From NCBI RefSeq assembly GCF_001447785.1, contig NW_015161410.1:1286366-1350365 (forward strand): a stretch of DNA of 64,000 bases, given 5' to 3'. The stretch comes from Gekko japonicus. Taxonomy: Eukaryota. This document shows, one piece after another, positions 6,583 through 63,973 of the stretch (the stretch's first letter is position 1; each line of letters opens with the position of its first letter). Below the pieces are notes generated by a model. The model made no database searches, was not told where the DNA came from, and saw only the letters and a program-made list of their open reading frames with translations. Made by a program: the position numbers and the translations under genes.

Positions 6583-7455
6583 AAGGCAAGTAGACCTTTG
6601 AATACCAGTTCTAGGAGGCAACATCAAAGGGAGCGGTGGTGCAGGGAGCAAAAGCACCTGCCTTAACATCTAACAAACAGCTTGTAGGCTGTTCGATACC
6701 CACCGCGGCCGGGGTGAGCACCCGGCCCTAGTCCCAGCTCCCGCCCACCCAGCGGTTCGAAAGTGATAACAACTTATGAGTAGATAAATGGGTACCTTCC
6801 TTAGAAGGCAGGGAGCACCCTCCTCCATTGGGAAGTGAGGTGGGAACCTCAGCAGCGACGGTTCGGCGAGCGGTGGCGGCGGCAGCAGCGGAGTGGTGTG
6901 TAATGGCAGTGGTAGTCGAGGCGGTGAGCGGAAGAAAAAAGGAGATGCAACATCTAGCGGTGAACTGGCGGTGAAGGCGGAGCCCGGAAGGCGTGAGGAC
7001 ACTCGGCGCAGGCGCGGCGGAGCCTGAGGGACGGAGCCAGTGCCGCGCCGATGCGATCAGCACGACGAATGGGCCCACCAACTCCAAAAGATCTCCCGAG
7101 GAGCCTGAAGAGAGCGGAGGGAAGATGCCGACCCGAAGCCGAGAAGCCGAGCCGAGACGAGCTGAAGACACATCAACTGAATCCCACCGGGTGCCGTTAG
7201 GTAGTCCCGCCCCTAATACGATATATATATGTGCCCATAGATAGGGATAATACAAACTATGTAAGCCGCTCAGAGACCCATGGGAGGGGTTCGAGCGGGG
7301 TAGAAGTTGAAGGTAAGAAGAAGTAAGGCTTTGACCTCTGTGTTCTATCTGTTGTTGCTCTAGTGGAACTGGTTGGTCACTGTGTGAAATAGGATGCTGG
7401 ACTAGATTGAGCACTGACATGATCCAGTAGGGTTGCTGTGACATTATTACGTTCT
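6583..7455 (+). mobile_element. Old CR1-type 3' end interrupted by the 6629-7328 insertion
   Basis: Left part gaataccagttctaggaggcaacatc and right part ctttgacctctg…ggaactggttggtcactgtgtgaaataggatgctggactagat…gatccagtaggg rejoin as a typical squamate CR1 3'UTR. Confidence 0.6.
6629..7328 (+). mobile_element. Full-length ~700 bp composite SINE-like retroposon (tRNA-like head, Sauria-like core, CpG-rich body, L2-type tail)
   Basis: Head gggagcggtggtgcaggg with B-box-like gttcgatacc. ctagtcccagctcccgcccacccagcggttcgaaag resembles the Sauria SINE at 62.3 kb. Tail tgtaagccgctcagagaccc…gagcggggtagaag resembles the tails of the Squam3-like SINEs. Possible aagg TSD. Confidence 0.72.
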
Positions 7456-16414: not shown

Positions 16415-17863
16415 CGAGTGTATTAAAAGTAACTGAAACTTGATGTGACGAATGCATGGGTAATGGTGGCAAGATCAGTTCTTCTAGGGAAGAATTCAGC
16501 TGCCAGCCATGTTTGGTGAAAGGTAGTTCAGTCCATGGAAGCTACATTGGCATCAAGATAAGGCTGGGTCTAACTGTGAACTGTGAACATGATCTTTACA
16601 GGGAGGGTCATCACTTCCCCCCCCCCCCCTAGTCATGCACACAGGGAGGTATGCAGCACAGGTGCCGCTATTTGTGTTTTAATGCCCCAGGAGGCTGAGC
16701 AATCCAAAAGGGCCTAACAAGAAGACCCACAACATGGTTTCAGTTTTCATGTTATTTGCCTGCCTACTTGACTAACACCATAGCCTCAGTGTAAATTCTA
16801 ACATCTGTATACATAAAAGATGAAGCAAATGTTTTATTCCCCACTTCAGTTTTCAGCTTCTCAGTTTATGTTTCAGACCTATACCAGTAGTTCGCTTAGC
16901 ACCATTACCAAGGTGGTAATATTCCTATGCTAACTAATTGCTTCCCAAGCCTAAATAGTGGGTTTAGTTATTTTCCAAGGATTTCCCCCCAAGCCATGAA
17001 CTCATTGTCAAAGTCTGTTTCAAAAGTTTAATACGAATTGTCGACACTTCACTTTGGAGCCATAATCCCAAATAACACATACAAGACAACATAAGGTGTG
17101 AAAACCACAACCGAATTTTGGAATTTGTGTTTTACTATTAAATTCTTTGACTCCTGAGCTTGATATATGTATTGTATTAAGCAGCTTTAACTGCCAGAGT
17201 ACATGATTTAGCATTCTGAATGAGAAAATATATGATTTACAATCCTCTTTCTGGGTCAAAGTAGAACCACAATATTCTGGATGTTGGATTTTGTGTTCTT
17301 TAGCTGAGAATTAGCCTTTCCCTTCCATTTAGCGGGATTATATAGTTTGCAATTTGCTGTATTTTCTTCAGTCAGATTTAGCACAGTTTACAAAGCTTGG
17401 GTAATGGTTTGGGATGGGATGCATGATGCATGATGAATTAACAGTGTAAAAATGCTAAGTTCCTCAGTGTAAATAATTTGTATTCAGATAGTTCCCTTTT
17501 AAAAGAAGCTGCTGTCATTTTAGTAGGTGGAACGTGTAGCCTTCTTAAGAGCACATTCTCTGAATTTCCTTAGCATTGTCATTTAGTGAAATAAATGGTA
17601 GGTTGGACAAAAGGGAATTTCTCTTCCCAGTGGTGTGGTTTAGATGACGCAGAAAACCATGGCTTAATTATACTGTGACGTTCTCTGGAGGATATGTGAA
17701 TATAGTATATGGTGATGGTTTATGGTTGGGAAGTATGGGAAGGGGAGTGGCTTGAGAGGCTGAGGGAGTGAGGCAAGGAGTATGTTTCACACGCAGGGAA
17801 AAATTGGTTGATGGTTGAGGAGGCCACCAATTCATGTTGTCCTCAGCTACCAAGGTGCCCGGC

Positions 17864-18142
17864 AAGAAGAGAAGAGATTGGATTTATACTCCGTCCTTCA
17901 CTACTCAAAGGAGTCTCAGAGCAGTTTACAATCTCCTTTCCCTTCATCTCCCCACAATGAACACTCTGTGAGGTAGGTGGGGCTGAGAGAGCTCTTTTGA
18001 GAACTGCTTGTGAGAGAACATCTCTGAAAGAACTTGTAACTGACCCATGGTCACACCAGCAACTGCATGTGGAGGAGTGGGAAATTAGGCCCGATTCTCC
18101 CAGATTAGAGTCTGTGCTCCTAACCACACCAAACTGGCTCTC
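17864..18142 (-). mobile_element. tRNA-derived SINE with L2-type tail (Squam3-like)
   Basis: Reverse complement of the SINE at 56929-57213. A/B-box head and (ttc)n tail. Confidence 0.8.
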
Positions 18143-18925
18143 AGTGGCCTGAAAACAAAATCCCTTCTGCCTTTCACACTCTTTCACTAGCCGCCTCCTT
18201 GACCATGTTCTTGACTCCTAGTCTGCTCAGGAAAAACAATATCCAAAGATTTCTGAGGAGGATCTGTTGCCCTTGCAGAGCTACTTACCAATGTTTAAGG
18301 GGGTTAATGATGTTGTGCGGCTTTGTCTATAGTTGGGAATGGTAGGCCAGGATAGCACCCATGCTTCTGCGAGGAAGTTGTTGAATTTGCCAAATCCAAT
18401 TACCATTGAGTGATTATCTGTGAGCAAATAGTGGTTTCACAAATTAGACATAGTGTTAATAAGCCATGGCTTTGCATTATGCCTGAACTGACCCATTAGT
18501 TTGTGAGATTTACTGTGAGTTTGGATAACTGTTTGAACAAGAACTACATTTCACATTGGTGTCTGCTGAAGTAAGTAATTAGAAAAAATCATGGTCTTTC
18601 AATAAAATCATTTCAGTTAGTCTTAGAGATACAACTAGATTATTTTAGTGAGCATTCAAGCAGTAACATTTGCATGTATATATTCTAAAATGGGATAATT
18701 ACATGCAGTGTTTTAATTTATGCTGTAATTGTCCTACATTTGAATCGCCTACAAGAAAAATAAATGTTTTATATCTATTTAGAATTTTACTAAGCTGTCT
18801 TCTGGTTTATTTGTCACATATGTTTTTAAAATATGGCTACTAGAGAGAACGAACCAAAATTCCATCAATTTTACTTAAATTGTGGCATCTGTACACTCTT
18901 CTTAATATAATTCTGCATGTTCATA

Positions 18926-19441
18926 TTTTTTATTTATTTTATTTATCATTCGACTTGATATACCGCCCTAACCCCCGTAGGGGTCTCTGGGCGGTTTACA
19001 ATTCTTGGGTGCTAGTCACCTATATCAACCCTAACTACGGCCACATCAGTTCAAGGGGGGGGGCTGCCTACTGGCACCCTGGTGGAGGCTCGGTGTCGTT
19101 CACTTTTCCCGGCTCGGCTTCTTCTTTCGGCTGTGAAATGTCCCAGTGCTTAGGCCGACAGGCGGATGGATGGATCGCCGGCGACGTTGTCCTCAGCCCG
19201 ACTGTGTCCTTCTGGCTCCGTGCGCCTCCGGATGACATCACTGCGCCTCCATCCTCCGTCGACGACAGCTGCCCTGCTCTTCCGTTGCTGGCCACCAGGG
19301 ATCAGTCCCCTTCTGGCTCTGCTGCCGCCGCTTGCCGCCTTCAGCGTTACACAGCCTCCTCCTCCTCCGATCGTCGTACCCATTTATCTACTCGCCGATA
19401 GGTAGTTACTTGGCTTTCAAACCGCTGGGTGGGCGGGAGTA
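18926..19441 (-). mobile_element. 5'-truncated composite SINE-like retroposon (Sauria-like core, GC-rich body, L2-type tail) fused to the TESC 3'UTR
   Basis: Minus strand reads ctcccgcccacccagcggtttgaaag…gagtagataaatgggtac (shared with 6738-6795), gaagccgagccg…ccaccagggtgccagtaggcagcccc (shared with 7142-7213), and ends tgtaaaccgcccagagaccc…gggcggtatat…(taaa)n. Confidence 0.75.
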
Positions 19442-19571
19442 CCAAGCAACTGCCCTAGATCCCTGCAGCACTGGGAGAAGCCAATCCCCCATCTACCCGT
19501 ATTGACCGCCCAACATTCTGTCCTGGGTCGCTTTCAAAGGCATCGGCACTTCCATTGCAGCTCCTCTTTGG

Positions 19572-20216
19572 TTAGTGGCAAGGCGCAATTGGCTCCATGG
19601 TGAGGAAGCGGACGTGCATCTTGGTCTCGATGTCGATTCCTTCCCACATCTTCAGAAAGTCTTCAAATGTGATTCCCTCGTACACCTGGTCTGGCTCCAT
19701 CTGCCCCATGCAGATGCTGGCAGCCTCCATCATGGCAGCCTCCGCGATGGACCTCACCGACTCCTTATCCAGGTGGGGGTTCCCTGAGAGCAGTTCCTGC
19801 ACCACTTTTCTGTATTCCTGCAGGGTGATCTTCCCATCGCTGTCCGAGTCATACATGTGAAAGAGGAATTTCAGCTTCTGTTTGCGGAAACGATCCAGCT
19901 GCTCTTCATCCATATCCATCTCAATCGGTCTGAAATTAGACATGATAGTCAGGAAGTCCTCAAAATTGATTTCATCCACCAGCCCTTCGGATGCCTCTCG
20001 TAGGTTCCTTTTGTCAAAAAAGGAATGGACGATTTTGGCCCTAAGGGGGTTGAACTCCAGATCAGGGATGCGATCAAAGTTCTCTTTGCGGATGGTTGGC
20101 TGATCCCCACTTAGCTGTCTGAATCTTCGGTGGAGATGCTCGATTTGCTCTGAGGTGAAGCCAGTCTTGTCGGCGAGCTCCTGGATCTCCTCCGACCTGG
20201 AGTGGGACGCCCCCAT
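19572..20216 (-). CDS. TESC: Intronless tescalcin / calcineurin B homologous protein 3 retrocopy with an intact 214-aa ORF (candidate retrogene)
   Basis: ATG at 20216 in strong context (ggcATGg), TAA at 19572-19574, 645 nt with no stops or frameshifts. MGASHS N-myristoylation motif, EF-hand loop [12 protein letters not shown] and C-terminus [12 protein letters not shown]…CH are typical of TESC. Same length as human TESC as I recall it. Vertebrate TESC is multi-exon, whereas this copy is contiguous. Confidence 0.93.
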
Positions 20217-20420
20217 GCCCCCCTCGGCGAGGCTGCTGGATGCAGCTCGGACACAACCCCGGGGTCCGGTCGGTTGGGGCCTGGGTGGTGGAGGGGCGGC
20301 CGGCAGAAGGGCGGGCAGGGCAAGTGGAGGGCAGGAGGGGGCCGTGGCGGGTCCGTCCACATAGGAACCCTGCAGGCTGCTGGCGCGCGGGCGAGAGCGG
20401 CAGAGGCAGAGGAGGACTGT
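20217..20420 (-). promoter_or_regulatory. GC/CpG-rich 5' leader of the TESC retrocopy (probable parental 5'UTR, CpG-island-like)
   Basis: Very GC-rich with many CpGs and GGGGCGG/GGGCGGG GC-boxes. Switches abruptly to AT-rich intron sequence at about 20420. Confidence 0.55.
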
Positions 20421-21071
20421 AGTAAATGAGAGCAGTTGCTCTGAGCCCTAAATGAACAAAGTACCTTGTAAAAAAATACTACTAGTTATCAGATACTTTC
20501 TCTTTTGGAGCAATTGCTGCGGTGAGTGAAAATATAATACTAGGACCAGGATTTCATGTCAAAGATGTTTTCTAAGGTAATATACATAGTTATTTCTTTG
20601 GAACTGAGAAGAAAAAAAATGTAGAAACATAACAGGGTATAGAAAAGAAAGGAAGAGGGGCCTTAAATGGCACTACAGTGACAGGGTCTTTTAAAAAAGG
20701 ATTTGGACTTGAGAGATAACTGATTTTGTGTACTATTATTGCCTCAAAGATTAACCAGGAATCTTTTTACTATTATCTCCAGAATGAGGTTCAAAGAAGA
20801 ATTGTCAGAGAAATTCTCTATTTCTTTTTCATTTTTCACCTTCACTGTTATGTTTTCCTCCAGAGTGTGAACATTGAATGTTATAGAAGCAGTGTAAGAA
20901 TTTTTTTGCCTAGCATTTGATTCAGGAATTTAAGCAGCTACAGAGTTAAATCTAAATTAGATCAAATGATCATGGAAATATTTTGTATCTATTGAATTGT
21001 ATTGCAGGACGCTTCCACTGCAGAGGTCGAAAGGACCTCTCTGTCAGAGAAGAATCAAGTGCTACCAGGAG

Positions 21072-25200: not shown

Positions 25201-28200
25201 ACGTATTGCATTGTGAACAATTTCTGTGTGTTTACAGGATGCTCAACCCCATGCATACTCAGTGATTGAGTTCTTATTTAGTGCAAACTGTAGCTTATAG
25301 CTATTGATTCAACAACAATTAGAAGCTGGATTGCACTGCTGATTTGGAAGGAAAACACAGATTGTTGTTTCTCCAAAATTGAAAGTAACTAGTTATGCAA
25401 GGGAAAAAGGAAGCTCATATGCATATACTGGTCTTGTTCAGGTAGCACCAAAACCAGGTTTGGGTCTTAATATCTGCACACACCCCTTCACTTTCTCATT
25501 ATTAGGAAAGACTAAAATTAGACAAGTCTTTAAGAAGCAAAGTACTGATAAAGAATCTTTCTATTTATTGGGTCACGCTGGACACTCTTGTAGGATGCTG
25601 AATTCTGCAGTAGGACTATTCCAGTAGATTAAANNNNNNNNNNNNNNNNNNNNNNNNNNNNNNNNNNNNNNNNNGACTGGCATAACTTTTCATGACAGAG
25701 GGGGGATTTGATCCTGGGACTCCCCAATTGTAGTCTGACATTTTAACCACTACACAATGCTGGCGGAACACATAAAGGTAAATCCTGACCAATATATCTA
25801 TTAAGTTGTGGGTACAGTGGGTCATGCCTTGTATGCAGCTCAGTAACTCATCTTAATGTGGTGCGCATGTAAATAAAAGTGAAAACTGCAGCCAGTAAAC
25901 AAGGGTCAATGTCTGTAGGTTTCCTTACAGCTGATTTGCATGTTACTTGCAGCCAAGGAGGTATTTTAAGGCCTTATTTATACCGATTTATCATGAGTAG
26001 CCACATTAAGGATGGTCAGGAATTGCTTTTGAGAGAAAAAAGACTGGAGCAAAGGGAATGCTCTACTTTGTGGAAGTTCTATTAAAACAATAACATAAAT
26101 AAATGAAGCTAACATTACACAGCAACTTTGCAGCAGTTCCTTTCATTGCACTAACATTGGAGAAGCTGCTGCTGGATCATGTCCAAAGTCAGTCCTGGGA
26201 GGGTTACTGTTAAGCTCTGATTATATGTTTCATATGCGTAAAATAGTTGGTGTTCCTCATTCCAATACAGAATTCAGAGTCCTTCATGAAGTACCTTAAG
26301 CTGTGCACATTTACCTTTCATATTTATGAGTTTTCTTGTACTATTGTTGAGCTCACACTCACTGTGTTATATGCTTTTAACATCTGGATTTACCTGAGGC
26401 AGTTGTGTTTATGGTTGTGTGTGTGATGGGGGGAGAGAGAGGTTAAACACTCAGGATGTTGTTTTCTGACAAGCTTTTTTTTAAAAATAAAAATTAAAAA
26501 TTCCAGCTTTGAAATGGCCAAAAATTGAAATAAGCAATTGCTTGATTCTTAAACACAATTAAATAAATTATAATCCAACCAGATGTTTTCAGGGTTGTTA
26601 CATGCTGAAAATGGGATCCAGTCTCCGATTATGTACTTCAAGGGCTTCTGTCAGTATTAAGGGATTCACTGATCCTTACTTGTTGCTGTGACAAACAAAA
26701 ATCAGAAAATAAAACTTATTCGTTGGGAATATTTTTTATTTTACCTTTCTCCATCATTGGAGTTACGTCAGGTTGCAATTATGATAAAAAGAATATACAA
26801 TGAAATCCATAAAATTAAAAAAAGAATAATTTAAAATTATATGACAGCATGAAAAACCCTCCTGAATAATTCTTCTTTACGTACCTTGCAGAATCTCTAG
26901 TGATAGTGGATGTCTTATAAAATATTGTCTTAATTTGAATGGTGCTTTTCCTCATGTCCCATGCAGAAATCCCAACACGTGTCCCCACCCCCTCTGTTTA
27001 GTCTGCCCACTCACCTATTTCTAGTCATTCCCCCCCCAAAATCCCTAATGCCCCCAACCTCTCATCATTTATCTTCTCTAGATCAGATCTTCACCCTGTC
27101 ATTCTCCATCTACCTTCCACGATCCCCATTTCCCAAATGAGTCCTGGAGGCTCCATTATGTTGGAAATAGCAATTGAACCATTCTCCTTTCTAATCACAC
27201 ATGTTGATTGTTGATTGCTGAGGGAAGTATACTCTGTACATATAGTGAAACACTCTTCCTCAGGTCATATTTTTTGAACTCTTTGGCATTGTAAAAAAAC
27301 CCTTCCTTGTACTGTTTATGAAAGAGAAGCACCCCCCTTAAGGGAATTAATAGTAAATTATTAATGGATGGTGGGGTTTTTTTTTGCTACCAGTGGGTGT
27401 TAGGAGCTAGTGTGGCAAGGGACAGAGTTTTAAGGAGCACCAATGGTTTAGACAGCTCTGAGCCACTACTCATATAGCACTTCTTGGTGCTGTAGAATAA
27501 ATTTGCTGTAAATGTCATTATAGTTGAGGATTTTGGGTTATTGGAAGTCCAAAACCATAATTCTGCCATGTTTACAATGAGAATAAATTACATAAGACAG
27601 CAAATCTTATTTTATTACAGATCTAATAAATCAACCAGGTTTGTTGTATTGAACTTGTGTCAGTAAAAGTTGTACATTTGTTTAAGAGGGGAGACCCTTG
27701 AGTGGTCACCACGGGTGCTGCTGCCATCATGACTTTCTGAACCTAGCATGGTGCCTTCTCCATCTTGTTTCTTTTTTTCTTCCAGCCATTAACCCCAGTT
27801 TATGGTGCTCCATTCCTTTAAGCCCTTCACCAACATGGAGCTTCTTCATGTTGGGGCCATGCAAACTGAGTATCTGCTATTGTTTCTGCCACTTCCTTGG
27901 CACCAGTTTGTAGCTGGAGGAGGAAAGCTTATGGGTGAATCTTCAAACTACTCAGGAGATGCATGTGGTGGTGGAGCCACATTTAGATAGGCCTGACACA
28001 ATGAAACAAGGAGGAAATGTGACTTATGGGGTGTTGGATAGGAACCAGAAGCTCAGAAAGACAAATCTTCAGAAGACTGAAAACGTTCCCTCTCTGGCTA
28101 TTGGAAGCAGCTTCAGTGGCCTGAATCAGTATTTTCCAAATTTTCAGTCAGTAGACTCAAATTGGTGAGATGTTGTGGCAAAATGAGCAGCAGTGTTTTT

Positions 28201-28749: not shown

Positions 28750-29214
28750 NNNNNNNNNNNNNNNNNNNNNNNNNNNNNNNNNNNNNNNNNNNNNNNNNNN
28801 NNNNNNNNNNNNNNNNNNNNNNNNNNNNNNNNNNNNNNNNNNNNNNNNNNNNNNNNNNNNNNNNNNNNNNNNNNNNNNNNNNNNNNNNNNNNNNNNNNNN
28901 NNNNNNNNNNNNNNNNNNNNNNNNNNNNNNNNNNNNNNNNNNNNNNNNNNNNNNNNNNNNNNNNNNNNNNNNNNNNNNNNNNNNNNNNNNNNNNNNNNNN
29001 NNNNNNNNNNNNNNNNNNNNNNNNNNNNNNNNNNNNNNNNNNNNNNNNNNNNNNNNNNNNNNNNNNNNNNNNNNNNNNNNNNNNNNNNNNNNNNNNNNNN
29101 NNNNNNNNNNNNNNNNNNNNNNNNNNNNNNNNNNNNNNNNNNNNNNNNNNNNNNNNNNNNNNNNNNNNNNNNNNNNNNNNNNNNNNNNNNNNNNNNNNNN
29201 NNNNNNNNNNNNNN
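28750..29214. other. Assembly gap (other gaps at 25634-25674, 38437-38568 and 62326-62363)
   Basis: Runs of N. Confidence 0.99.
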
Positions 29215-30489
29215 ACCAGCTTCAGTTTGCAGGCTTTCCCCCGAGGCCTGTATTTCAAATTTGAATAAGGAAGTGGCCCCTGCACCGAAAATGAGGTTTG
29301 GACCGCCACACCTCATACACCCCCATATTCACAGGACTCTCCCCTTCGAGCGGACATATGCGGTGTGCTGGTCCAAAGCGCGGTTCTGGTGCCAGCTGCT
29401 CCAACACCAGCTGGTGTTGCAGCTCTGGTGTAAAAGGAGAAGAATATGAATTGACAGTCCCACTGCAAATGGAGTTGTGTAGTTTAACCCTAAATTAACT
29501 TGAACAAATTATTCCAGTTAAAAAGGGAGCACCTGTGGTGTAATGTCATGTTCCTTAAATACTGTCTCTGCTTGATAAGCACAGACGGTTCGACTTCCAG
29601 CCCAGAAAATCTGGTCAACTAGCATAGTAAAGTGCTCTGTTATTAACGCATGCCATTAGCAGAGACTGTAGTGGGCTCAGTGATAGCTTTTGATATCCAA
29701 CACAAGTAAGCTCTAATTTCTTTAACAACACTGTTTTGAGGAATAAATGCATGTATATTTTTAGGATGTTTACGACATGCAGAATGCCAGATATGCTGTT
29801 AGAAACACTGTTACAATAGTGATGATTATTATTTGGTAAGTTGCATAAAGAAAGGAATGTTGCGGGCCAGCATTTCTATCCTTTACTTTTTTAAAAAACT
29901 GCAGAAGACCAAATAATCTTACACAGTATTAATTCAGAATGCACAATGCTGTATTGGCATTTGAAGGTCTTTAATTTTCATCATGATCATTCTTTGATCA
30001 CTTGGGCCATTATCATTAATTTCAGGGAATTAGAGATTCTGCTCTGGTGAGCACTTCACAAATCCTGCATCCACTCCCTTTACTGTTCCTGAATGCTACA
30101 TTATCAGTTGGGTTGTCTAGAGAGACAAGGTATTATACAATATAACAGTAAAAGTTCCCCCCTCTTTCTACTGCATTGTGTATGGAAGGAGGATCCAAGA
30201 GAAAGATTTAATTCATGCAGTTCCTTTTTGTATACCTTTTCTCATTCAGAGCAAATGCTGATCTCCTTTTAGTTGATGATGCCAAGGTTTAAATCTGAGC
30301 TATAGCTCAGAGGTAGGATATCTGTTTTGCACACAGAAGGTCCTATGTTCAGTCCCATGGATCTCTGGTTAAAGGAATTAGGTAGTCAGTGATGTGAAAG
30401 ACCTTTCTTTGAATCCCTGGAGAGCTGTCAACACTCAAGAGTAGTCACTACTCATGTTGGTAGGTCAGTGGTCAAATGTAGTTACTTTC

Positions 30490-35559: not shown

Positions 35560-38500
35560 AACAAGGAGCAAATGCAGGTTTTCTATGCTGCCTAATCTCA
35601 GGTCAAGCAAATCTCAAGTCTTTTCTAAGTCACTTCAGAATGTAGTGCTGGAGTAGTTCCAGACAACCATGTGCTGTGTTCTAGGTCAGCATGAAGAAAA
35701 TAATTCATGACCTACTGAAGGGAACTTCTGGGTCAACATCAAGTACCAGTACCGTCTTTATTCCCTACTTGTGAACGTCAAGAGGCAGGTTTCAGACAAC
35801 TGACTCCATTCCCATGCCCCCATGCAAGTTAATTTCCACAGCCTGTTGGGATAATGATGTTTAGTGGCTACTGTTGGATGCTGTATGATAGATGGACTTG
35901 GCCTTGCTCAGGATGTTACTTCTTATGGTTTAAAGGCCACATGAGACTAATGTCAGTTCCACACACACGACATACCAGGTAGTGTAAATTAGTCTTGGAA
36001 GTAAAAATGTTAACAGTGAGTAAACATCTAATTCACTGTATCATGTTGCATGTGCTGGATCAGACCAGTGGTGGCCACTGTTGGATGCTGTATGATAGTT
36101 AGATGCAACCAGCCTATTTCCCTGGAGGATCAAGATAAACAGGAATGTCTAGACATCATTATCCCCACATTCTGTGGAAATTAACCTGCATCGGGGCATG
36201 GGAATAGAGTAGCAGCCTGAAACCTGAGGTTTTGAAGGCAAAATTAATTTTAGACAGCAAGTTTCCCTTCATATACCACCTAGTATTTGGCTTTTGAAAT
36301 TGTATAGCGTGTGACCAATAGATCATTCTTCTCGTCTCGTCCTAAATTTTTTGAAATAGTCCTTTGGGAAAATCATCTTCTAAGAATTCTTCAAACACCC
36401 TTTTTCTACTTCTTATCTCAAGTACTTTTGTCTTATGGGTTAATTGTTTTTGCAGTGAATTTTACACATTTCTAAGAGAAGCAAAATTGGGATATGGGGG
36501 AGTATTATCTTTGATTTCCAGTTATTGCGCTTCAAAACAATTATAAGACAGAGATTTTACCAACTTCTTATTTTTTTTAGAATAAGACTGGATATGGAAG
36601 CCAATATTTTTTCTTCGATTAATGCATCCAGTAGATTAGTAAATATATGAAGCCGCCTTAAACTGACTTCATTTTATAGACCCACCTAGGTATGTTCCCA
36701 CAATTAATCTGACTGGTAGCAACCATTCAAAGTCTTTTGCAGCTCTGTTGCCTGAGAGTTTGAGATACTGGGACTGGCATATGCAAAACATATGTTCTGC
36801 CATTAAGTTTATGGCCCCTCACTATATTGCAACATTCTAGGATTCTGTTCTGTAATACTGATTATTGTGCTACTTTTTTTGGTAAGATAGCCTTGAGTTT
36901 ATTAGATAAAGCTTATATCAAAGTTCAGTAAGCAAGTATAAATATATGAAAAGAGGTGCACAAATTGATGATAAATTCTACATAATCATGCTTGTAGCCA
37001 TTCCTTATGTGGATCCTTGATTGGGTATTTTCCTGGAGTTTGTACAGATAATCTTTCGTATTATTAATTCAGTTCTCCTCCTTAGAAGCATAGGCAGTTT
37101 TTTCCTCTGCTTTTACTTTACTGGTAAGTCTTTTCACAGCAGAGCACTCCACTGGCATCTGCATAACTTCTTATCCTTAATGTTAACCATCCTGGCAGTT
37201 TTATCCTCATTAGGTACATAGATTTAAAATCAATGGGATGGGACAGAGTGGCCCAAAACATCACAGTGCTTTCTAAATTCTTATAAGAATGATTTGGTTT
37301 CAGCTTGGTGGCCTATCCATCGCTTTGTAATCTGAATTGTGGTATCTGCTCTACCAGTCCAAGAATTGGCCCTGCTTCTGATGCAGTTCTGTTTGTTATG
37401 TGAAAGATAAGTCATCCCCCTGTCTCACTGAATTACTAGAAACAAATCTCTGCTCAGAAAGACAAAGACATACCCACTTGTCTGGTAGTATCATTGTTTC
37501 AGTATTATAAGCATCTCTCACTGGATCTATTGTCCAATTATATTTTTGCATCTAGTGATGGCAGTTGTGATTATAGAACACCTACATGGAAAGAGAAACA
37601 TTATTTTTCTGACATAAGTTATGAGAGAAACTAATAGTGCTTTCTTTCTTGACCTGTCTTAATTCTTGAGTGGAAGGGTTTCCAGGACCTTGACAGTTCA
37701 GGTTTTGGAGCTCAGAGCAAAAGGGTAGAGCTGACTGCTAGCTCATCATGACTGCATATTTGGCCAATAAAAGGTATTTGAATTTGAATTTGACTGCATA
37801 TTTGATGGCATCTTCTAATACTTCTGTGTGGTAACTATTACTCGTATCAAATGGAAATGGGAGGCAACTGTCTTGCATTAAGGTTCTACTTTTGGCACAC
37901 AGTTCATATTTTGCATGTGATAAGTAGTCTATATATCTAATTCTCAAAATTGGCCCCCTGTGTGTGGATACTTATTTCTGCAGATCAGGGGCACATGGAG
38001 GGAAAAGAGATTATTCTGCACACTTGGGGCACTCTCCAGGTCAACAGAAAAATCTAAAAACTTTAAAAAAGGATATGGGGGATACTTAAATCCCCCCAAA
38101 AGCACAACAGCCTTTTCTGCTCATGTACAGAGAATGGACTTACCAAAGATGAGGAGCCTTCTCTCCCCCTCCTTGGAAAGCGACTGTTTTGAGCACGTGA
38201 CTGCCCTTAGCAATGACTTTCCTAGTGACGAGGCCTTCACAGGCTTTTCCTCTTTTGGGAAGATGGTCGGAAAGTGGCGGGTAGCTTTGTGGCTGAGCCT
38301 ATACTCACTTGGCCTCCCAGGCACTGCCACCACTGCCAGGCTCAAAGAGGAGAAGAATGAGGGGAGAAAGAAGGGGGAGGGGATTGGCTTGGGGGGGAGA
38401 GAGAAAGGGAAAGATGGGGGGATTTGTTTGGGGGGGNNNNNNNNNNNNNNNNNNNNNNNNNNNNNNNNNNNNNNNNNNNNNNNNNNNNNNNNNNNNNNNN

Positions 38501-39155
38501 NNNNNNNNNNNNNNNNNNNNNNNNNNNNNNNNNNNNNNNNNNNNNNNNNNNNNNNNNNNNNNNNNNNNCTCCTCTCCGCAAGTTTCTTGTGAGTCGCCCC
38601 TTGTCTCTTATAAACCCATAAGCCCCAAGATTGTGACAGAACACATTCCAGGATACCAGGGTAGATCCTGCTTCTATCTTACCACTCCACTGAGCAAAGT
38701 TTGAAGGCTTCCTGCAGCCTAAGAATCTTTCTTTTAAATTAAGTGGATCTTCCTCTAACAGAAGAGATGGTTAAAGAGATGGCCAAGTGGGGCTTCTGCC
38801 CAGCAGGGTTTCTGATGGCCATTCCAGATATGATTGTCTATGCAGATTTTTAGAAAGTTTTTTCAGCAGCTGCTGCTGAAGCACAACATTTTTTACTGTA
38901 TGATTAAAGATAAGCTGTCTCTATGTGAGAAAATAGTGTTCAAAAATATGTTAGTTTTAAAAGGCATCCTTAGAGATAACCTGACTCATTGAGATTTTGT
39001 GGTTGTCTCTGCCTCTTTTGGCAGCCATTTTGTGGTTACACCCACCATCCAGTGTCAGAATTCAACAGGCTTAAAGAGGTTTGGGACTCTTGTTGTAGTT
39101 TCTCTCATAATCTTGTATAGTTCTTCTTACACTCGTAGTGGTTGGCCCTTCACAA

Positions 39156-44029: not shown

Positions 44030-44236
44030 AGAAGAGTAGGTTTTTATTACCCCACTTTTTGTCTACTTTAAGGAGTTTCAAAGCAGCTTCCCTTCCTTCA
44101 ACAGGCACCTTTGAGGTTTGGTGGGGCTGAGAGAGTTCTGAGAAAGTTGTGACGGCCCAAGGTCACCCAGGAGGCTTCATGTGGAGGATTAGGGAATAAA
44201 ACCCAGTTCTTCAGATTAGAGTCTGCTTCTCTTAAC
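44030..44236 (-). mobile_element. Squam3-like SINE
   Basis: ggtggggctgagagag…aaggtcacccag…cagattagagtctgc…cttaaccact, homologous to the other copies. Confidence 0.7.
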
Positions 44237-45435
44237 CACTAGATCATGCTGGCTCTTAAAAAAAAAAAAAGGTAGCACCCCCTGAGCTTAAATCTTCTAC
44301 CACCCACTGAGTACACAGCATTATAATCAGCTATCCCCCAAGTTACAATTAAAAATTTAGGACACATAGACAGTAGTAACTTTATTTAGTGCATACAGCA
44401 ACACACCGATCTCAGATATACATTTGATGATGCCCTTATGCCCCATGTCCACGAGCCAGCTCCTTAATGGCAAATTGGGTTCCTATTGCTGAATGCTACC
44501 TTTTTTGGGTGTGTGTGTGAGACTGTGGAAGAAATGTAGGATTGTAATCTAATATCTTCCTTAACTTTCAACAAGCAAGGCATGCTGTAAATAACAAAAA
44601 AATAAATAATAACCTCAGGGTGGAGTGACTTCTTCTCCATTAACTGTTAGAAGCCATTGCAGATGGGGGGAAAGGGCTGCCTAAAATTCAGAATTTTACA
44701 CACACACCCAGTTCTAATCTATACCACCTCTGGATAATGTATGGCTCCCATTAAAAATGGCTGTTAAAATGTGATTTTTCAGTGTGAACTACTTGTGAAT
44801 GTTCAGTTTAGCAGGGAAGGGGGGGCATATTGACGTAGAATAAATGCAGGTGGGTAGCCATGTTAGTCTGAAGAAACAAAACAAAGTTTGAGTCCAGTGG
44901 CAACTTGAAACCAACAAAGTTTAATTCTGGGTATAAGCTTTTGTGTGCATAACTAGAATAACTTATGGGAATTTAGGCAAAGGTTCCCAGTAGCCATATT
45001 GGTCCAATGTAAAATCCAAAGTAAAAAATGTATCCTTTATGAATACCAATCAAAACAGTATGCAAGCTTTTGAGTTCTCCAGAATTCTTCTTTAGGCTGG
45101 ATGTTTGAAAAAGGGTTTGGGAGATGTTTTAAGACACAATTTTAAGTTGAGTATTGTGCAGAATATCAAGCAGTTGCTGGGTGGAACTGATATCACATGA
45201 ATTCTTTGGTCTTCTGGGAAGAAGAAAGAGAGCACGTAAACGTCCAAAGGAATTTTTTTAAAAAAAGATGTATCAAGTGTCTCTTTAACACCAGACACAA
45301 CACACATGTCCCTTTAAAGGCTGATAGCAGAGAGGAAGGTAGCAATCCACTGTACTGACAATGGGGAAAATTGCCATCAGCAAGTCACAGCTAACTAATG
45401 TTGACATCATAGTGTTTTCAAGGCAAGAGACAAAC

Positions 45436-56928: not shown

Positions 56929-57213
56929 GAGACCCAGTTTGGTGTAGTGGTTAAGTGTGCGGACTCTGATCTGGGAGAACCAGGTTTGATTCCCCACTCC
57001 TTCACTTGCACCTGCTGGATGACCTTGGGGAAGCCATAGTTCTGGCACAGCTGTTCTTGAAAAAGAGCAGTTTCTGTCAGAGCTCTCTCAGCCCCACCTA
57101 CCTCACAAGGTGTCTGTTGTGGGGAGGGGAAGGGAAAGGAGCTTGTAAGCCGCTCTGAGACTCCTTTGGGTAGTGAAGGGCTGGGTATAAATCCAGTCAC
57201 TTCTTTCTTCTTC
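56929..57213 (+). mobile_element. Squam3-like SINE, full length
   Basis: A box tggtgtagtgg, B box ggtttgattcccc, CORE-like tgaccttggg…cacctacctcacaagg, and tail tgtaagccgctctgagactcc…ggtataaatcc(ttc)n. Confidence 0.85.
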
Positions 57214-57619
57214 TCTCTAGATAGTGGCATCCATTAGAAATTGTTCCTTTGCACAATAGCCCATGATTCAACATTCAACCACAGCCTAACATTTTGTTAG
57301 GGTTTGCAGTGATGCACAGTCAGGTTCATTTTGTACAGTGGAGGTACTTCATTTGTTGAGCAATCAGATTTAAAGAGACCAGCATGTATTGGGACAAGCT
57401 CTGGTCAGAACACTGGGGGTCATATATTTATATGTTTAGTTATTTCTCATTGTAGGGAAGAATATGGACTAGGCTTAGAAGTGGAAGCTTTTCTGAGAAC
57501 TGGAAGCATTTCCAAGGAGTGTCAGACTGCAAGGCCTATTTCTGTGAGAAACTCATGTGTTTTTTTTGTTTTGTTGTTGTTGTTCATAATACACTTTCTA
57601 CTGACTCTCATAATCTAGA

Positions 57620-62183: not shown

Positions 62184-62506
62184 GGGAGCTGCGGTGGCTC
62201 AAGTGGTTAAGACGCTGAACTACAGGCTGTGGAAGGTCGGTAGTTCAGCAGTTCGAGACCCGAGTGTGCCGCAGGACGGAGTGAGCTCCCATCTCTAGTT
62301 CCAGCTCCTGCCAACCTAGCAGTTCNNNNNNNNNNNNNNNNNNNNNNNNNNNNNNNNNNNNNNCCTTGGTGTTTAGTCATGCCGGCCACATGACCACGGA
62401 AATGTCTTTGGACAGCGCTGGCTCTTCGGCTTTGAAACGGAGATGAGCACCGCAACCCTAGAGTCGGATTTGGCTGGCTTTCGAGCAAGGAAACCTTTAC
62501 CTTTAC
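62184..62506 (+). mobile_element. Sauria SINE (Squam1), full length with an internal N gap
   Basis: tRNA-like head, ccagctcctgccaacctagcagttc core, (accttt)n tail and taatta TSD. Confidence 0.88.
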
Positions 62507-63746: not shown

Positions 63747-63973
63747 TAGTCATTTGGTGTGGTGGTTAATCTGGGAGAACCGGGTTTGATTCCCCACTCC
63801 TCCACTTGCACCTGGCTGGATGACCTTGGGCAAGCCATAGTTCTGATAGCTCTCTCAGCCCCACCTACCTCATAGGGTGCCTGTTGTGGGGAGGGGAAGG
63901 GAAAGGAGTTTGTAAGCCACTCTGAGACACCTTTGGGTAGCAAAGGGCGGGGTATAAATCCAATCTCTTCTTC
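63747..63973 (+). mobile_element. Squam3-like SINE with internal deletions
   Basis: Homologous to 56929-57213. Confidence 0.8.

What the first reader, a model, noticed from the sequence alone, without database searches (positions are those of the whole stretch)
18926..20420. TESC retrocopy ends in a SINE/L2-type tail instead of poly(A): possible chimeric mRNA-SINE retroposition
Seen: on the minus strand the TESC stop is followed by only ~130 nt, then directly and in the same orientation by a 5'-truncated composite SINE (19441 to 18926) ending in an L2-type tail plus (taaa)n. No poly(A) or TSD separates the two parts. Known: L2/CR1/RTE enzymes generally recognise their own 3' tails, unlike mammalian L1, which uses poly(A); template-switch chimeras are documented for L1. 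Inference: the mRNA may have been mobilised by borrowing an L2-recognised tail. Either the RT switched template from SINE RNA to TESC mRNA, or the parental 3'UTR already carried the SINE. This would be a route to retrogene formation by stringent LINEs. The AATAAA motifs in the tail could also serve as the copy's polyadenylation signal.
Basis: partly seen in the sequence, partly recalled or inferred. Interest (0 to 1): 0.82.

Follow-up and report, generated by a model that had tools for sequence, protein, structure and literature searches.

The report
Gecko TESC retrocopy ending in L2-type SINE tail
An intact, intron-free copy of the calcium-binding gene TESC in a gecko genome ends in a truncated SINE with an L2-type tail instead of a poly(A) tail. 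It was therefore probably pasted in by an L2-type jumping-gene enzyme that read the SINE tail, a route known in principle but rarely seen for a whole gene, and the decisive comparison with the parent gene could not be run.

Summary
On the minus strand an intact 214-aa TESC/CHP3 ORF (98% identical to Gekko japonicus CHP3) is followed by 130 nt of 3'UTR with no poly(A) signal. A 5'-truncated composite SINE in the same orientation follows directly, and it ends in a strong stem-loop plus (TAAA)n.

That tail module is shared with Squam3-like SINEs in the window. The literature assigns Squam3 to an L2-clade partner with (TAAA)n or (CTT)n tails and very few target-site duplications. There is no poly(A), no further UTR and no duplication around the unit or around the SINE alone. 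The whole block is a CpG-retaining, GC-rich island in CpG-poor flanks.

The best reading (about 0.6) is one L2-type retroposition of TESC mRNA joined to the SINE. I worked beside those places afterwards.

A later independent SINE insertion is less likely but not excluded. The scan noted similar mRNA/tRNA-SINE chimeras elsewhere in this genome; these notes are unchecked leads. This is a good example of a known principle, not a new mechanism.

The parts
20217..20420 (-). GC-rich leader (GC 0.74, CpG o/e 0.66), taken as the TESC 5'UTR part of the retrocopy. The 5' boundary is good to about +/-10 nt.
   Evidence: Identity with the parental 5'UTR was not tested.
19572..20216 (-). Intact intronless TESC/CHP3 ORF, 214 aa plus the TAA stop. 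It differs from Gekko japonicus CHP3 by four residues, all derived here (Q64H, A65S, D159E, G160A). Places 19601-19637 lie inside this ORF and were not sent to any search tool.
19442..19571 (-). 130-nt remnant of the 3'UTR with no poly(A) signal hexamer. It ends abruptly at the SINE junction.
19005..19441 (-). 5'-truncated composite SINE in the same orientation as TESC. It has a Sauria-like core (19376-19439) and a CpG-rich body. The roughly 110-nt head of the full-length copy is absent. CpG o/e for the whole SINE (18926-19441) is 0.86.
18952..19004 (-). LINE-derived region of the SINE. It forms a stable stem-loop (-28.2 kcal/mol, z = -4.5) that is conserved in three other L2-type tails of the window.
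   Evidence: PMC7983390
18926..18947 (-). (TAAA)n A6 microsatellite tail with three overlapping AATAAA motifs. This is the end of the inserted block.
   Evidence: PMC7983390 and PMC10702118 for (TAAA)n tails
6629..7328 (+). Comparator: a full-length copy of the same composite SINE family (head, Sauria-like core, CpG-rich body, same tail module). CpG o/e is 0.88 and no target-site duplication was found.
17862..18142 (-). Comparator: a Squam3B-like (Ther1/MIR-type) SINE with the same LINE-derived tail module and a (CTT)n-like tail. No target-site duplication was found.
56929..57219 (+). Comparator: a second Squam3B-like SINE with the same tail module. No target-site duplication was found.

Best explanation
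The block 18926-20420 is a single retroposed unit. A spliced, 5'-complete TESC/CHP3 mRNA from a Gekko-lineage gecko was joined at its 3' end to a 5'-truncated composite SINE. The unit was reverse-transcribed and integrated by the SINE's L2-clade LINE partner, not by a poly(A)-dependent L1.

In this model the enzyme recognised the SINE's stem-loop plus (TAAA)n tail and primed cDNA synthesis in the microsatellite. It copied the SINE, then the 130 nt of 3'UTR, the CDS and the 5'UTR. It integrated without a target-site duplication, as this LINE partner usually does.

Two routes give the same product.
- (a) Favoured, about 0.38: the parental TESC 3'UTR already held this sense-oriented truncated SINE 130 nt after the stop. 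The SINE's own AATAAA motifs may have created an mRNA 3' end right at the tail, so that the mRNA mimicked a SINE RNA end.
- (b) About 0.22: the reverse transcriptase started on a free SINE RNA and switched to TESC mRNA inside its 3'UTR.

Shown: the anatomy, the tail homology, the stem-loop, and the absence of poly(A), duplications and leftover UTR. Inferred: the single event, the enzyme and the route.
For: - The TESC ORF is intronless and intact, and closest to Gekko japonicus CHP3. It shares that protein's lineage-specific residues and has four changes of its own.
- The 130-nt UTR remnant has no poly(A) signal, so it is not a natural mRNA end.
- The SINE is in the same orientation and directly abuts the UTR.
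- The tail has a strong stem-loop followed by (TAAA)n. This module aligns with the tails of two Squam3-like SINEs and of the full-length composite copy, and the stem is conserved.
- No duplication flanks the unit, and none flanks the three other L2-tailed SINEs in the window.
- No poly(A), A-run or UTR-like GC-rich sequence lies downstream of 18926.
- Both flanks have the same composition (GC 0.38, CpG o/e 0.14-0.18), while every part of the block keeps its CpGs (o/e 0.43-0.86). That fits one young insert.
- The principle that stringent LINEs mobilise any RNA carrying their 3' tail is established (eel UnaL2, as reviewed in PMC3747384).
- SINE-borne AATAAA motifs acting as 3'UTR ends are documented in dog (PMC11699766).
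Against: - The single-event claim is not demonstrated. No flanking duplication brackets the unit, no empty orthologous site was seen, and the parental 3'UTR was not seen.
- The identity of 19442-19571 and 20217-20420 as TESC UTRs is inferred from position and composition only.
- The assignment of the tail to L2 rests on similarity to Squam3-like tails within the window plus the literature. No L2 LINE 3' end was aligned.
- L1 elements exist in this genome according to other scan notes, so an L1 route is available.
- The A6 at the very end could be a shrunken poly(A).
Confidence: 0.6

Rival explanations
1. Two independent events. An ordinary TESC retrocopy came first, and the SINE later inserted into its 3'UTR or poly(A). 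The distal UTR and poly(A) were lost through a target-site deletion at integration.
For: L2-tailed SINEs are dense here, with at least five copies or fragments in 64 kb. Squam3 alone has about 260,000 copies in Gekko japonicus (PMC7983390). The partner LINE's lack of duplications (PMC7983390) suggests irregular cleavage that could delete target DNA. It also means a lone SINE insertion would leave no duplication to betray it.
Against: This needs an insertion in the right orientation inside a window of a few hundred nt, plus an exact loss of all remaining UTR and poly(A). Nothing UTR-like or A-rich lies downstream. The downstream flank matches the upstream flank in GC and CpG depletion. The SINE head is not found upstream of the retrocopy, so TESC did not insert into a pre-existing SINE.
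Confidence: 0.2
2. The parental 3'UTR carried the SINE and the mRNA was polyadenylated at the SINE's AATAAA. An L1-type, poly(A)-dependent enzyme then made an ordinary processed copy, and its poly(A) has since shrunk to A6.
For: There are three AATAAA motifs at 18934-18943 followed by A6 at the very end. SINE-derived poly(A) signals are documented (PMC11699766). L1-associated retrocopies are noted elsewhere in this genome (unchecked scan notes).
Against: Only six A's remain, although the block looks young (CpG o/e 0.86 in the SINE). There is no 7-20-bp duplication of the kind L1 normally leaves. The end coincides exactly with the SINE's own microsatellite.
Confidence: 0.1
3. The juxtaposition is an assembly artefact or a DNA-level rearrangement, with the SINE and TESC parts joined by mis-assembly or deletion.
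For: The DNA runs hold only about half of the sampled words.
Against: There are no N runs near the block; the nearest is at 25634. Two DNA runs hold 0.48-0.56 of the words of the stretch. The join is in the same orientation and the boundaries are clean.
Confidence: 0.05

Closest known systems
Mobilisation through a shared 3' tail by stringent L2-clade LINEs (eel UnaL2/UnaSINE1; reviewed in PMC3747384)
   Same: Both have a stem-loop plus a short tandem repeat at the RNA 3' end as the recognition module. cDNA synthesis starts in the repeat, and any RNA carrying the tail can be copied. No poly(A) is needed.
   Different: In the eel case the cargo was a SINE or an engineered reporter. Here the cargo would be a natural, complete protein-coding mRNA. 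The partner LINE was not identified in this window and no activity was tested.
Template-switch chimeric retrocopies (U6-L1 and mRNA-L1/Alu chimeras in mammals; tripartite WEIRD/Mg-SINE/MGL chimeras in Magnaporthe, PMC2104539)
   Same: In both, two unrelated RNAs are fused head-to-tail in one orientation. The 3' partner is a 5'-truncated retroelement, and the product is inserted as one piece.
   Different: The known cases are usually bracketed by one target-site duplication and end in poly(A) for L1. Here there is neither. The acceptor point would also be internal to a 3'UTR, not at an RNA end. Whether a switch happened at all is untested.
5' transduction / exon trapping by SVA and L1 in primates (from my own knowledge, not checked here)
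   Same: In both, a Pol II transcript that starts upstream, is spliced and reads into a retroelement is retroposed through that element's 3' end. It carries host exons with it.
   Different: SVA and L1 use poly(A) and L1 ORF2p. Here the handle would be an L2-type SINE tail sitting in a 3'UTR, and the cargo is a whole ORF.
Suh 2015 hypothesis on CR1 and the scarcity of avian retrogenes (cited in PMC5470649)
   Same: Both hold that a sequence-specific LINE can copy only those mRNAs that happen to carry its 3' recognition motif.
   Different: That hypothesis concerns CR1 (hairpin plus an 8-nt repeat) in birds and explains rarity. This locus would be a positive example for an L2-type partner in a squamate that also has L1.
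Squam3 and Sauria/Squam1 SINEs of squamates (PMC7983390, PMC10702118, PMC13295347)
   Same: The tail module and (TAAA)n match the Squam3 type. The core motif around 19376-19439 resembles Sauria-type SINEs, by my recollection and by scan note s1-830952.
   Different: The element is about 700 nt when full length and has a CpG-rich body, unlike the roughly 220-270-nt Squam3. It lacks the (ACCTTT)n Bov-B-type tail of true Sauria SINEs. I could not assign it to a named family.

Membership tests
Processed retrocopy of TESC/CHP3 | A complete coding sequence without introns that is collinear with the spliced protein of a multi-exon gene | tested here: met
   The ORF is a single 214-aa reading frame. 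It is 98% identical over 100% coverage to Gekko japonicus CHP3 and 87-94% identical to other squamate CHP3 proteins. That TESC is multi-exon in vertebrates is from my own knowledge.
Processed retrocopy of TESC/CHP3 | A separate parental gene elsewhere in the same genome | tested here: inconclusive
   A distinct CHP3 protein with the ancestral residues exists in Gekko japonicus on another scaffold (2.09 Mb versus 1.50 Mb).
L1-type processed pseudogene | A 3' poly(A) tract after a natural polyadenylation site | tested here: not met
   The 130-nt UTR has no poly(A) signal. The only A-rich tract is the SINE's own (TAAA)n A6.
L1-type processed pseudogene | A 7-20-bp target-site duplication | tested here: not met
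   No exact repeat of 7 nt or more, and no 10-nt repeat with one mismatch or 13-nt repeat with two, was found. Random sequence pairs pass these criteria 22% of the time.
SINE mobilised by an L2-clade LINE (Squam3-type tail) | A LINE-derived 3' region homologous to that of L2-partnered SINEs | tested here: met
   The tail aligns with two Squam3B-like SINE tails and the second composite copy, with a conserved TGTAARCCGCYC-type block and its partner. The Squam3 3' end matches L2-clade LINEs (PMC7983390). No L2 LINE itself was aligned.
SINE mobilised by an L2-clade LINE (Squam3-type tail) | A stem-loop followed by a simple-repeat tail | tested here: met
   The fold gives -28.2 kcal/mol with z = -4.5. 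In the consensus fold the two main stems, 9 of the 14 predicted pairs, are paired in 32 of 36 cells across the four tails, but only one pair shows a compensatory change. A (TAAA)n tail is reported for Squam3A in Gekko japonicus (PMC7983390).
SINE mobilised by an L2-clade LINE (Squam3-type tail) | Few or no target-site duplications | tested here: met
   None of the three other L2-tailed SINEs in the window has a duplication, and the unit has none either. [quoted passage not shown]
SINE mobilised by an L2-clade LINE (Squam3-type tail) | A Pol III (tRNA-derived) head | tested here: inconclusive
   The head is missing from the copy at the retrocopy because of truncation. ARAGORN does not call the head of the full-length copy at 6629 as a tRNA.
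Sauria/Squam1 SINE (Bov-B partner) | A Bov-B-derived 3' end with an (ACCTTT)n tail and regular target-site duplications | tested here: not met
   The tail here is (TAAA)n with a Squam3-type module and no duplication. PMC13295347 reports (ACCTTT)n tails and Tn-TA-type duplications for Sauria SINEs.
Template-switch chimeric retrocopy | Two RNA-derived parts fused in one orientation, with a 5'-truncated retroelement as the 3' part | tested here: met
Template-switch chimeric retrocopy | The junction is absent from the source gene, meaning the parental 3'UTR lacks the SINE at that point | not testable with these tools
A protein search with an ORF spanning the junction was blank.
Template-switch chimeric retrocopy | One target-site duplication around the whole chimera | tested here: not met
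   None was found. This is uninformative here, because the presumed LINE partner rarely makes duplications.

The most novel reading that the evidence does not exclude
A sequence-specific L2-clade LINE produced a complete retrogene that still codes for protein by priming on a SINE tail attached to an mRNA. If a census found more retrocopies in this gecko ending in the same tail, 'tail borrowing' through 3'UTR SINEs or template switching would be shown to be a regular route to retrogenes in genomes rich in stringent LINEs. The same SINE tail would supply both the reverse-transcriptase handle and the new gene's poly(A) signal.
Probability: 0.3. Interest if true: 0.65.

Novelty: new member of a known kind. 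Interest (0 to 1): 0.45.

Why it matters
Retrogene formation is usually credited to poly(A)-reading L1 elements. Genomes dominated by sequence-specific LINEs (CR1, L2, RTE) are thought to make few retrogenes because ordinary mRNAs lack the required 3' tail (PMC5470649, PMC3747384). A natural, intact gene copy ending in an L2-type SINE tail would be a concrete example of how that barrier is passed. It would also suggest a simple genome-wide test in squamates, which carry L1, L2, CR1 and Bov-B side by side. As it stands, this is one locus, and the key comparison is missing.

Tried and rejected
I therefore had no parental locus or 3'UTR.
- The look-up of sequencing runs gave only shares of words. 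Fourteen runs (X3-X16; X14 guessed DNA, the others guessed RNA or of unknown kind) from five studies hold 0.28-0.35 of the sampled words. Without laying them I cannot say whether this is the retrocopy's own RNA or a near-identical parental mRNA, nor whether it reaches into the SINE.

**Searches that came back blank**
- A protein word search with the 57-aa plus-strand ORF spanning the UTR/SINE junction (19332-19502) looked for a second locus with the same junction. It found no candidates and is uninformative.
- Rfam gave no hits in the window.
- Searches for flank repeats that could rebuild the empty site found the immediate flanks to be unique in the window.

**Ideas tested and dropped**
- Target-site duplication searches for the whole unit and for the SINE alone found nothing. 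One 9-mer match (20437 versus 17926) lies inside another SINE's tail and is at chance level.
- I looked for the missing SINE head inside the 130-nt UTR. Only an 11-of-12 match turned up, and 49 of 500 shuffles reach it, so it is not significant.
- TESC inserting into a pre-existing SINE was rejected, because no SINE head lies upstream of 20420.

**Not checked**
- I did not verify the PARD3-intron context stated in another scan note.
- The N runs in the window were left untouched.

Full report
**What is there.** On the minus strand, a 214-aa ORF runs without interruption from the ATG at 20216 to the TAA at 19572-19574.
- It has an EF-hand (Pfam) and belongs to the calcineurin-B-homologous-protein family (PDB sequence search).
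- It is 98% identical over its whole length to 'calcineurin B homologous protein 3' (CHP3, also called tescalcin or TESC) of Gekko japonicus. It is 93-94% identical to CHP3 of other geckos and about 87% identical to that of other lizards.
- It shares the residues specific to the Gekko protein (E23, R33, D101, M190). It differs from it at four positions (Q64H, A65S, D159E, G160A), and at each of these every other sequence keeps the Gekko japonicus state.

So this is an intronless copy derived from a Gekko-lineage TESC mRNA, and the changes lie on the copy's own branch. The window is therefore from a Gekko-lineage gecko, most likely Gekko japonicus itself. That last point is an inference from the two differently sized scaffolds carrying the two proteins.

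**The 3' end.** After the stop come 130 nt (19571-19442) containing none of the common poly(A) signal hexamers.
- From about 19441 the sequence is a repeat. It matches the full-length composite SINE at 6629-7328, with 83% identity over a 64-nt core and conserved islands all the way to the tail.
- The local alignment score is 73, against 21.7 +/- 2.8 for shuffles.
- The first roughly 110 nt of the full-length copy have no significant counterpart. The SINE is therefore 5'-truncated and lies in the same orientation as TESC.
- It ends with a stem-loop at 18952-19004 (-28.2 kcal/mol, z = -4.5, none of 200 shuffles as stable). A (TAAA)n A6 tract follows at 18926-18947 and contains three AATAAA motifs.

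**Which LINE the tail belongs to.** The tail block and its pairing partner recur in the second composite copy and in two other SINEs of the window, at 17862-18142 (minus) and 56929-57219 (plus). The four tails align, and the stem is kept in all of them.
- The latter two elements have the look of Ther1/MIR-type CORE SINEs with (CTT)n-like tails. This matches the published description of Squam3B/B3, the commonest SINE of Gekko japonicus.
- PMC7983390 states that the Squam3 3' terminus resembles L2-clade LINEs and that its tails are (TAAA)n or (CTT)n.
- True Sauria SINEs instead end in (ACCTTT)n, use Bov-B and make regular duplications (PMC13295347).

The label 'L2-type tail' is thus supported by homology within the window plus the literature. 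I did not align an L2 LINE itself, and I could not assign the roughly 700-nt composite element to a named family.

**One insertion or two?**
- The block 18926-20420 is GC-rich (0.52-0.74) and keeps its CpGs. CpG o/e is 0.86 in the SINE, 0.43 in the UTR remnant, 0.58 in the CDS and 0.66 in the leader. Both flanks are alike, at GC 0.38 and CpG o/e 0.14-0.18.
- Nothing UTR-like, no A-run and no poly(A) lies downstream of 18926 as far as the next SINE at 18142.
- No direct repeat brackets the unit or the SINE alone. This is uninformative for an L2-type partner, because none of the three other L2-tailed SINEs in the window has a duplication either. It does argue against an L1-type event.
- The SINE head is not found upstream of the retrocopy, so TESC did not land inside an older SINE.
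- The UTR breaks off without a poly(A) signal, so the SINE did not simply land in the poly(A) tail of a normal retrocopy.

The most economical reading is that TESC mRNA and SINE entered together, primed on the SINE tail by its L2-type partner. This is parsimony, not proof.

**Which route?** Two routes give the same product.
- In the first, the parental TESC 3'UTR already carried this truncated SINE. The tail's AATAAA motifs could then even have created an mRNA end right at the tail, giving the mRNA the 3' end of a SINE RNA. SINE-borne poly(A) signals are documented in dog (PMC11699766).
- In the second, the reverse transcriptase began on a free SINE RNA and jumped to TESC mRNA. Such chimeras are documented for L1 and for a fungal LINE (PMC2104539).

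Other first-stage notes of this scan list mRNA- or tRNA-SINE chimeras elsewhere in this genome. They are unchecked, and I used them only as leads. I favour the first route because it needs only a common situation, a SINE in a 3'UTR, and no internal-to-internal jump.

**Why the routes could not be separated.** The test that separates them is the parental 3'UTR, and I could not obtain it.
- A protein search with an ORF spanning the junction found nothing.
- Fourteen runs (X3-X16; X14 guessed DNA, the others guessed RNA or of unknown kind) from five studies hold 0.28-0.35 of the 31-mers of the 2-kb stretch. Some near-identical TESC-type RNA is therefore probably expressed. Whether it comes from this copy or the parent, and whether it includes the SINE, is unknown.

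**Comparison with what is known.**
- The principle that stringent LINEs copy any RNA carrying their 3' stem-loop and repeat is established (eel UnaL2; reviewed in PMC3747384).
- The idea that such specificity limits retrogene formation has been proposed for CR1 in birds (Suh 2015, cited in PMC5470649).
- Chimeric retrocopies and 5' transductions are known for L1 and SVA.

This locus would be a natural example for an L2-type partner carrying a complete ORF. It is a new member of a known kind, not a new mechanism.

**Verdict.**

| Item | Result |
|---|---|
| Observation | confirmed |
| Single L2-type unit | about 0.6 (parental-UTR route 0.38, template switch 0.22) |
| Later independent SINE insertion | about 0.2 |
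| L1/poly(A) route using the SINE's signal | about 0.1 |
| Artefact or other | the rest |
| Interest | 0.45 |

Noticed in passing
window 6629-7328 (+): A full-length copy of the same roughly 700-nt composite SINE. Its CpG o/e is very high at 0.88 (52 CpGs), it has a (GAAG/TAAG)-like tail and it has no target-site duplication. It is only about 79% alignable to the copy at the retrocopy, so it belongs to a different subfamily. ARAGORN does not recognise its head as a tRNA.
   Followed up: partly
window 17862-18142 (-), 56929-57219 (+); fragments at 63767-63940 and 44137-44256: Squam3B-like (Ther1/MIR-type) SINE copies with (CTT)n-like tails. They share the LINE-derived tail module with the composite SINE. 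Neither full copy has a target-site duplication.
   Followed up: partly
window 19572-20216 (-): The four residues that differ from Gekko japonicus CHP3 form two adjacent pairs (64/65 and 159/160). This could reflect two multi-nucleotide mutation events. The N-terminal MG myristoylation motif and the EF-hand loop are unchanged. Whether the copy is under selection could not be tested without the parental nucleotide sequence.
   Followed up: no
window 18600-20600: Fourteen runs (X3-X16; X14 guessed DNA, the others guessed RNA or of unknown kind) from five studies each hold 0.28-0.35 of the sampled 31-mers of this stretch. That is roughly the size of the CDS (645 of 2001 nt). It hints at expression of this copy or of a near-identical parent.
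   Followed up: no
window 30294-30369 (+): ARAGORN calls a tRNA-Ala(TGC). It could be a genuine tRNA gene or a tRNA-derived SINE head.
   Followed up: no
window 19461-19472 (-) versus 6635-6646 (+): An 11-of-12 match between the 3'UTR remnant and the start of the full-length SINE head. 49 of 500 shuffles reach the score, so it is probably chance. If real, the SINE would be internally deleted and not 5'-truncated.
   Followed up: yes
window 25634-25674, 28750-29214, 38437-38568, 62326-62363: Runs of N (assembly gaps or masked stretches).
   Followed up: no
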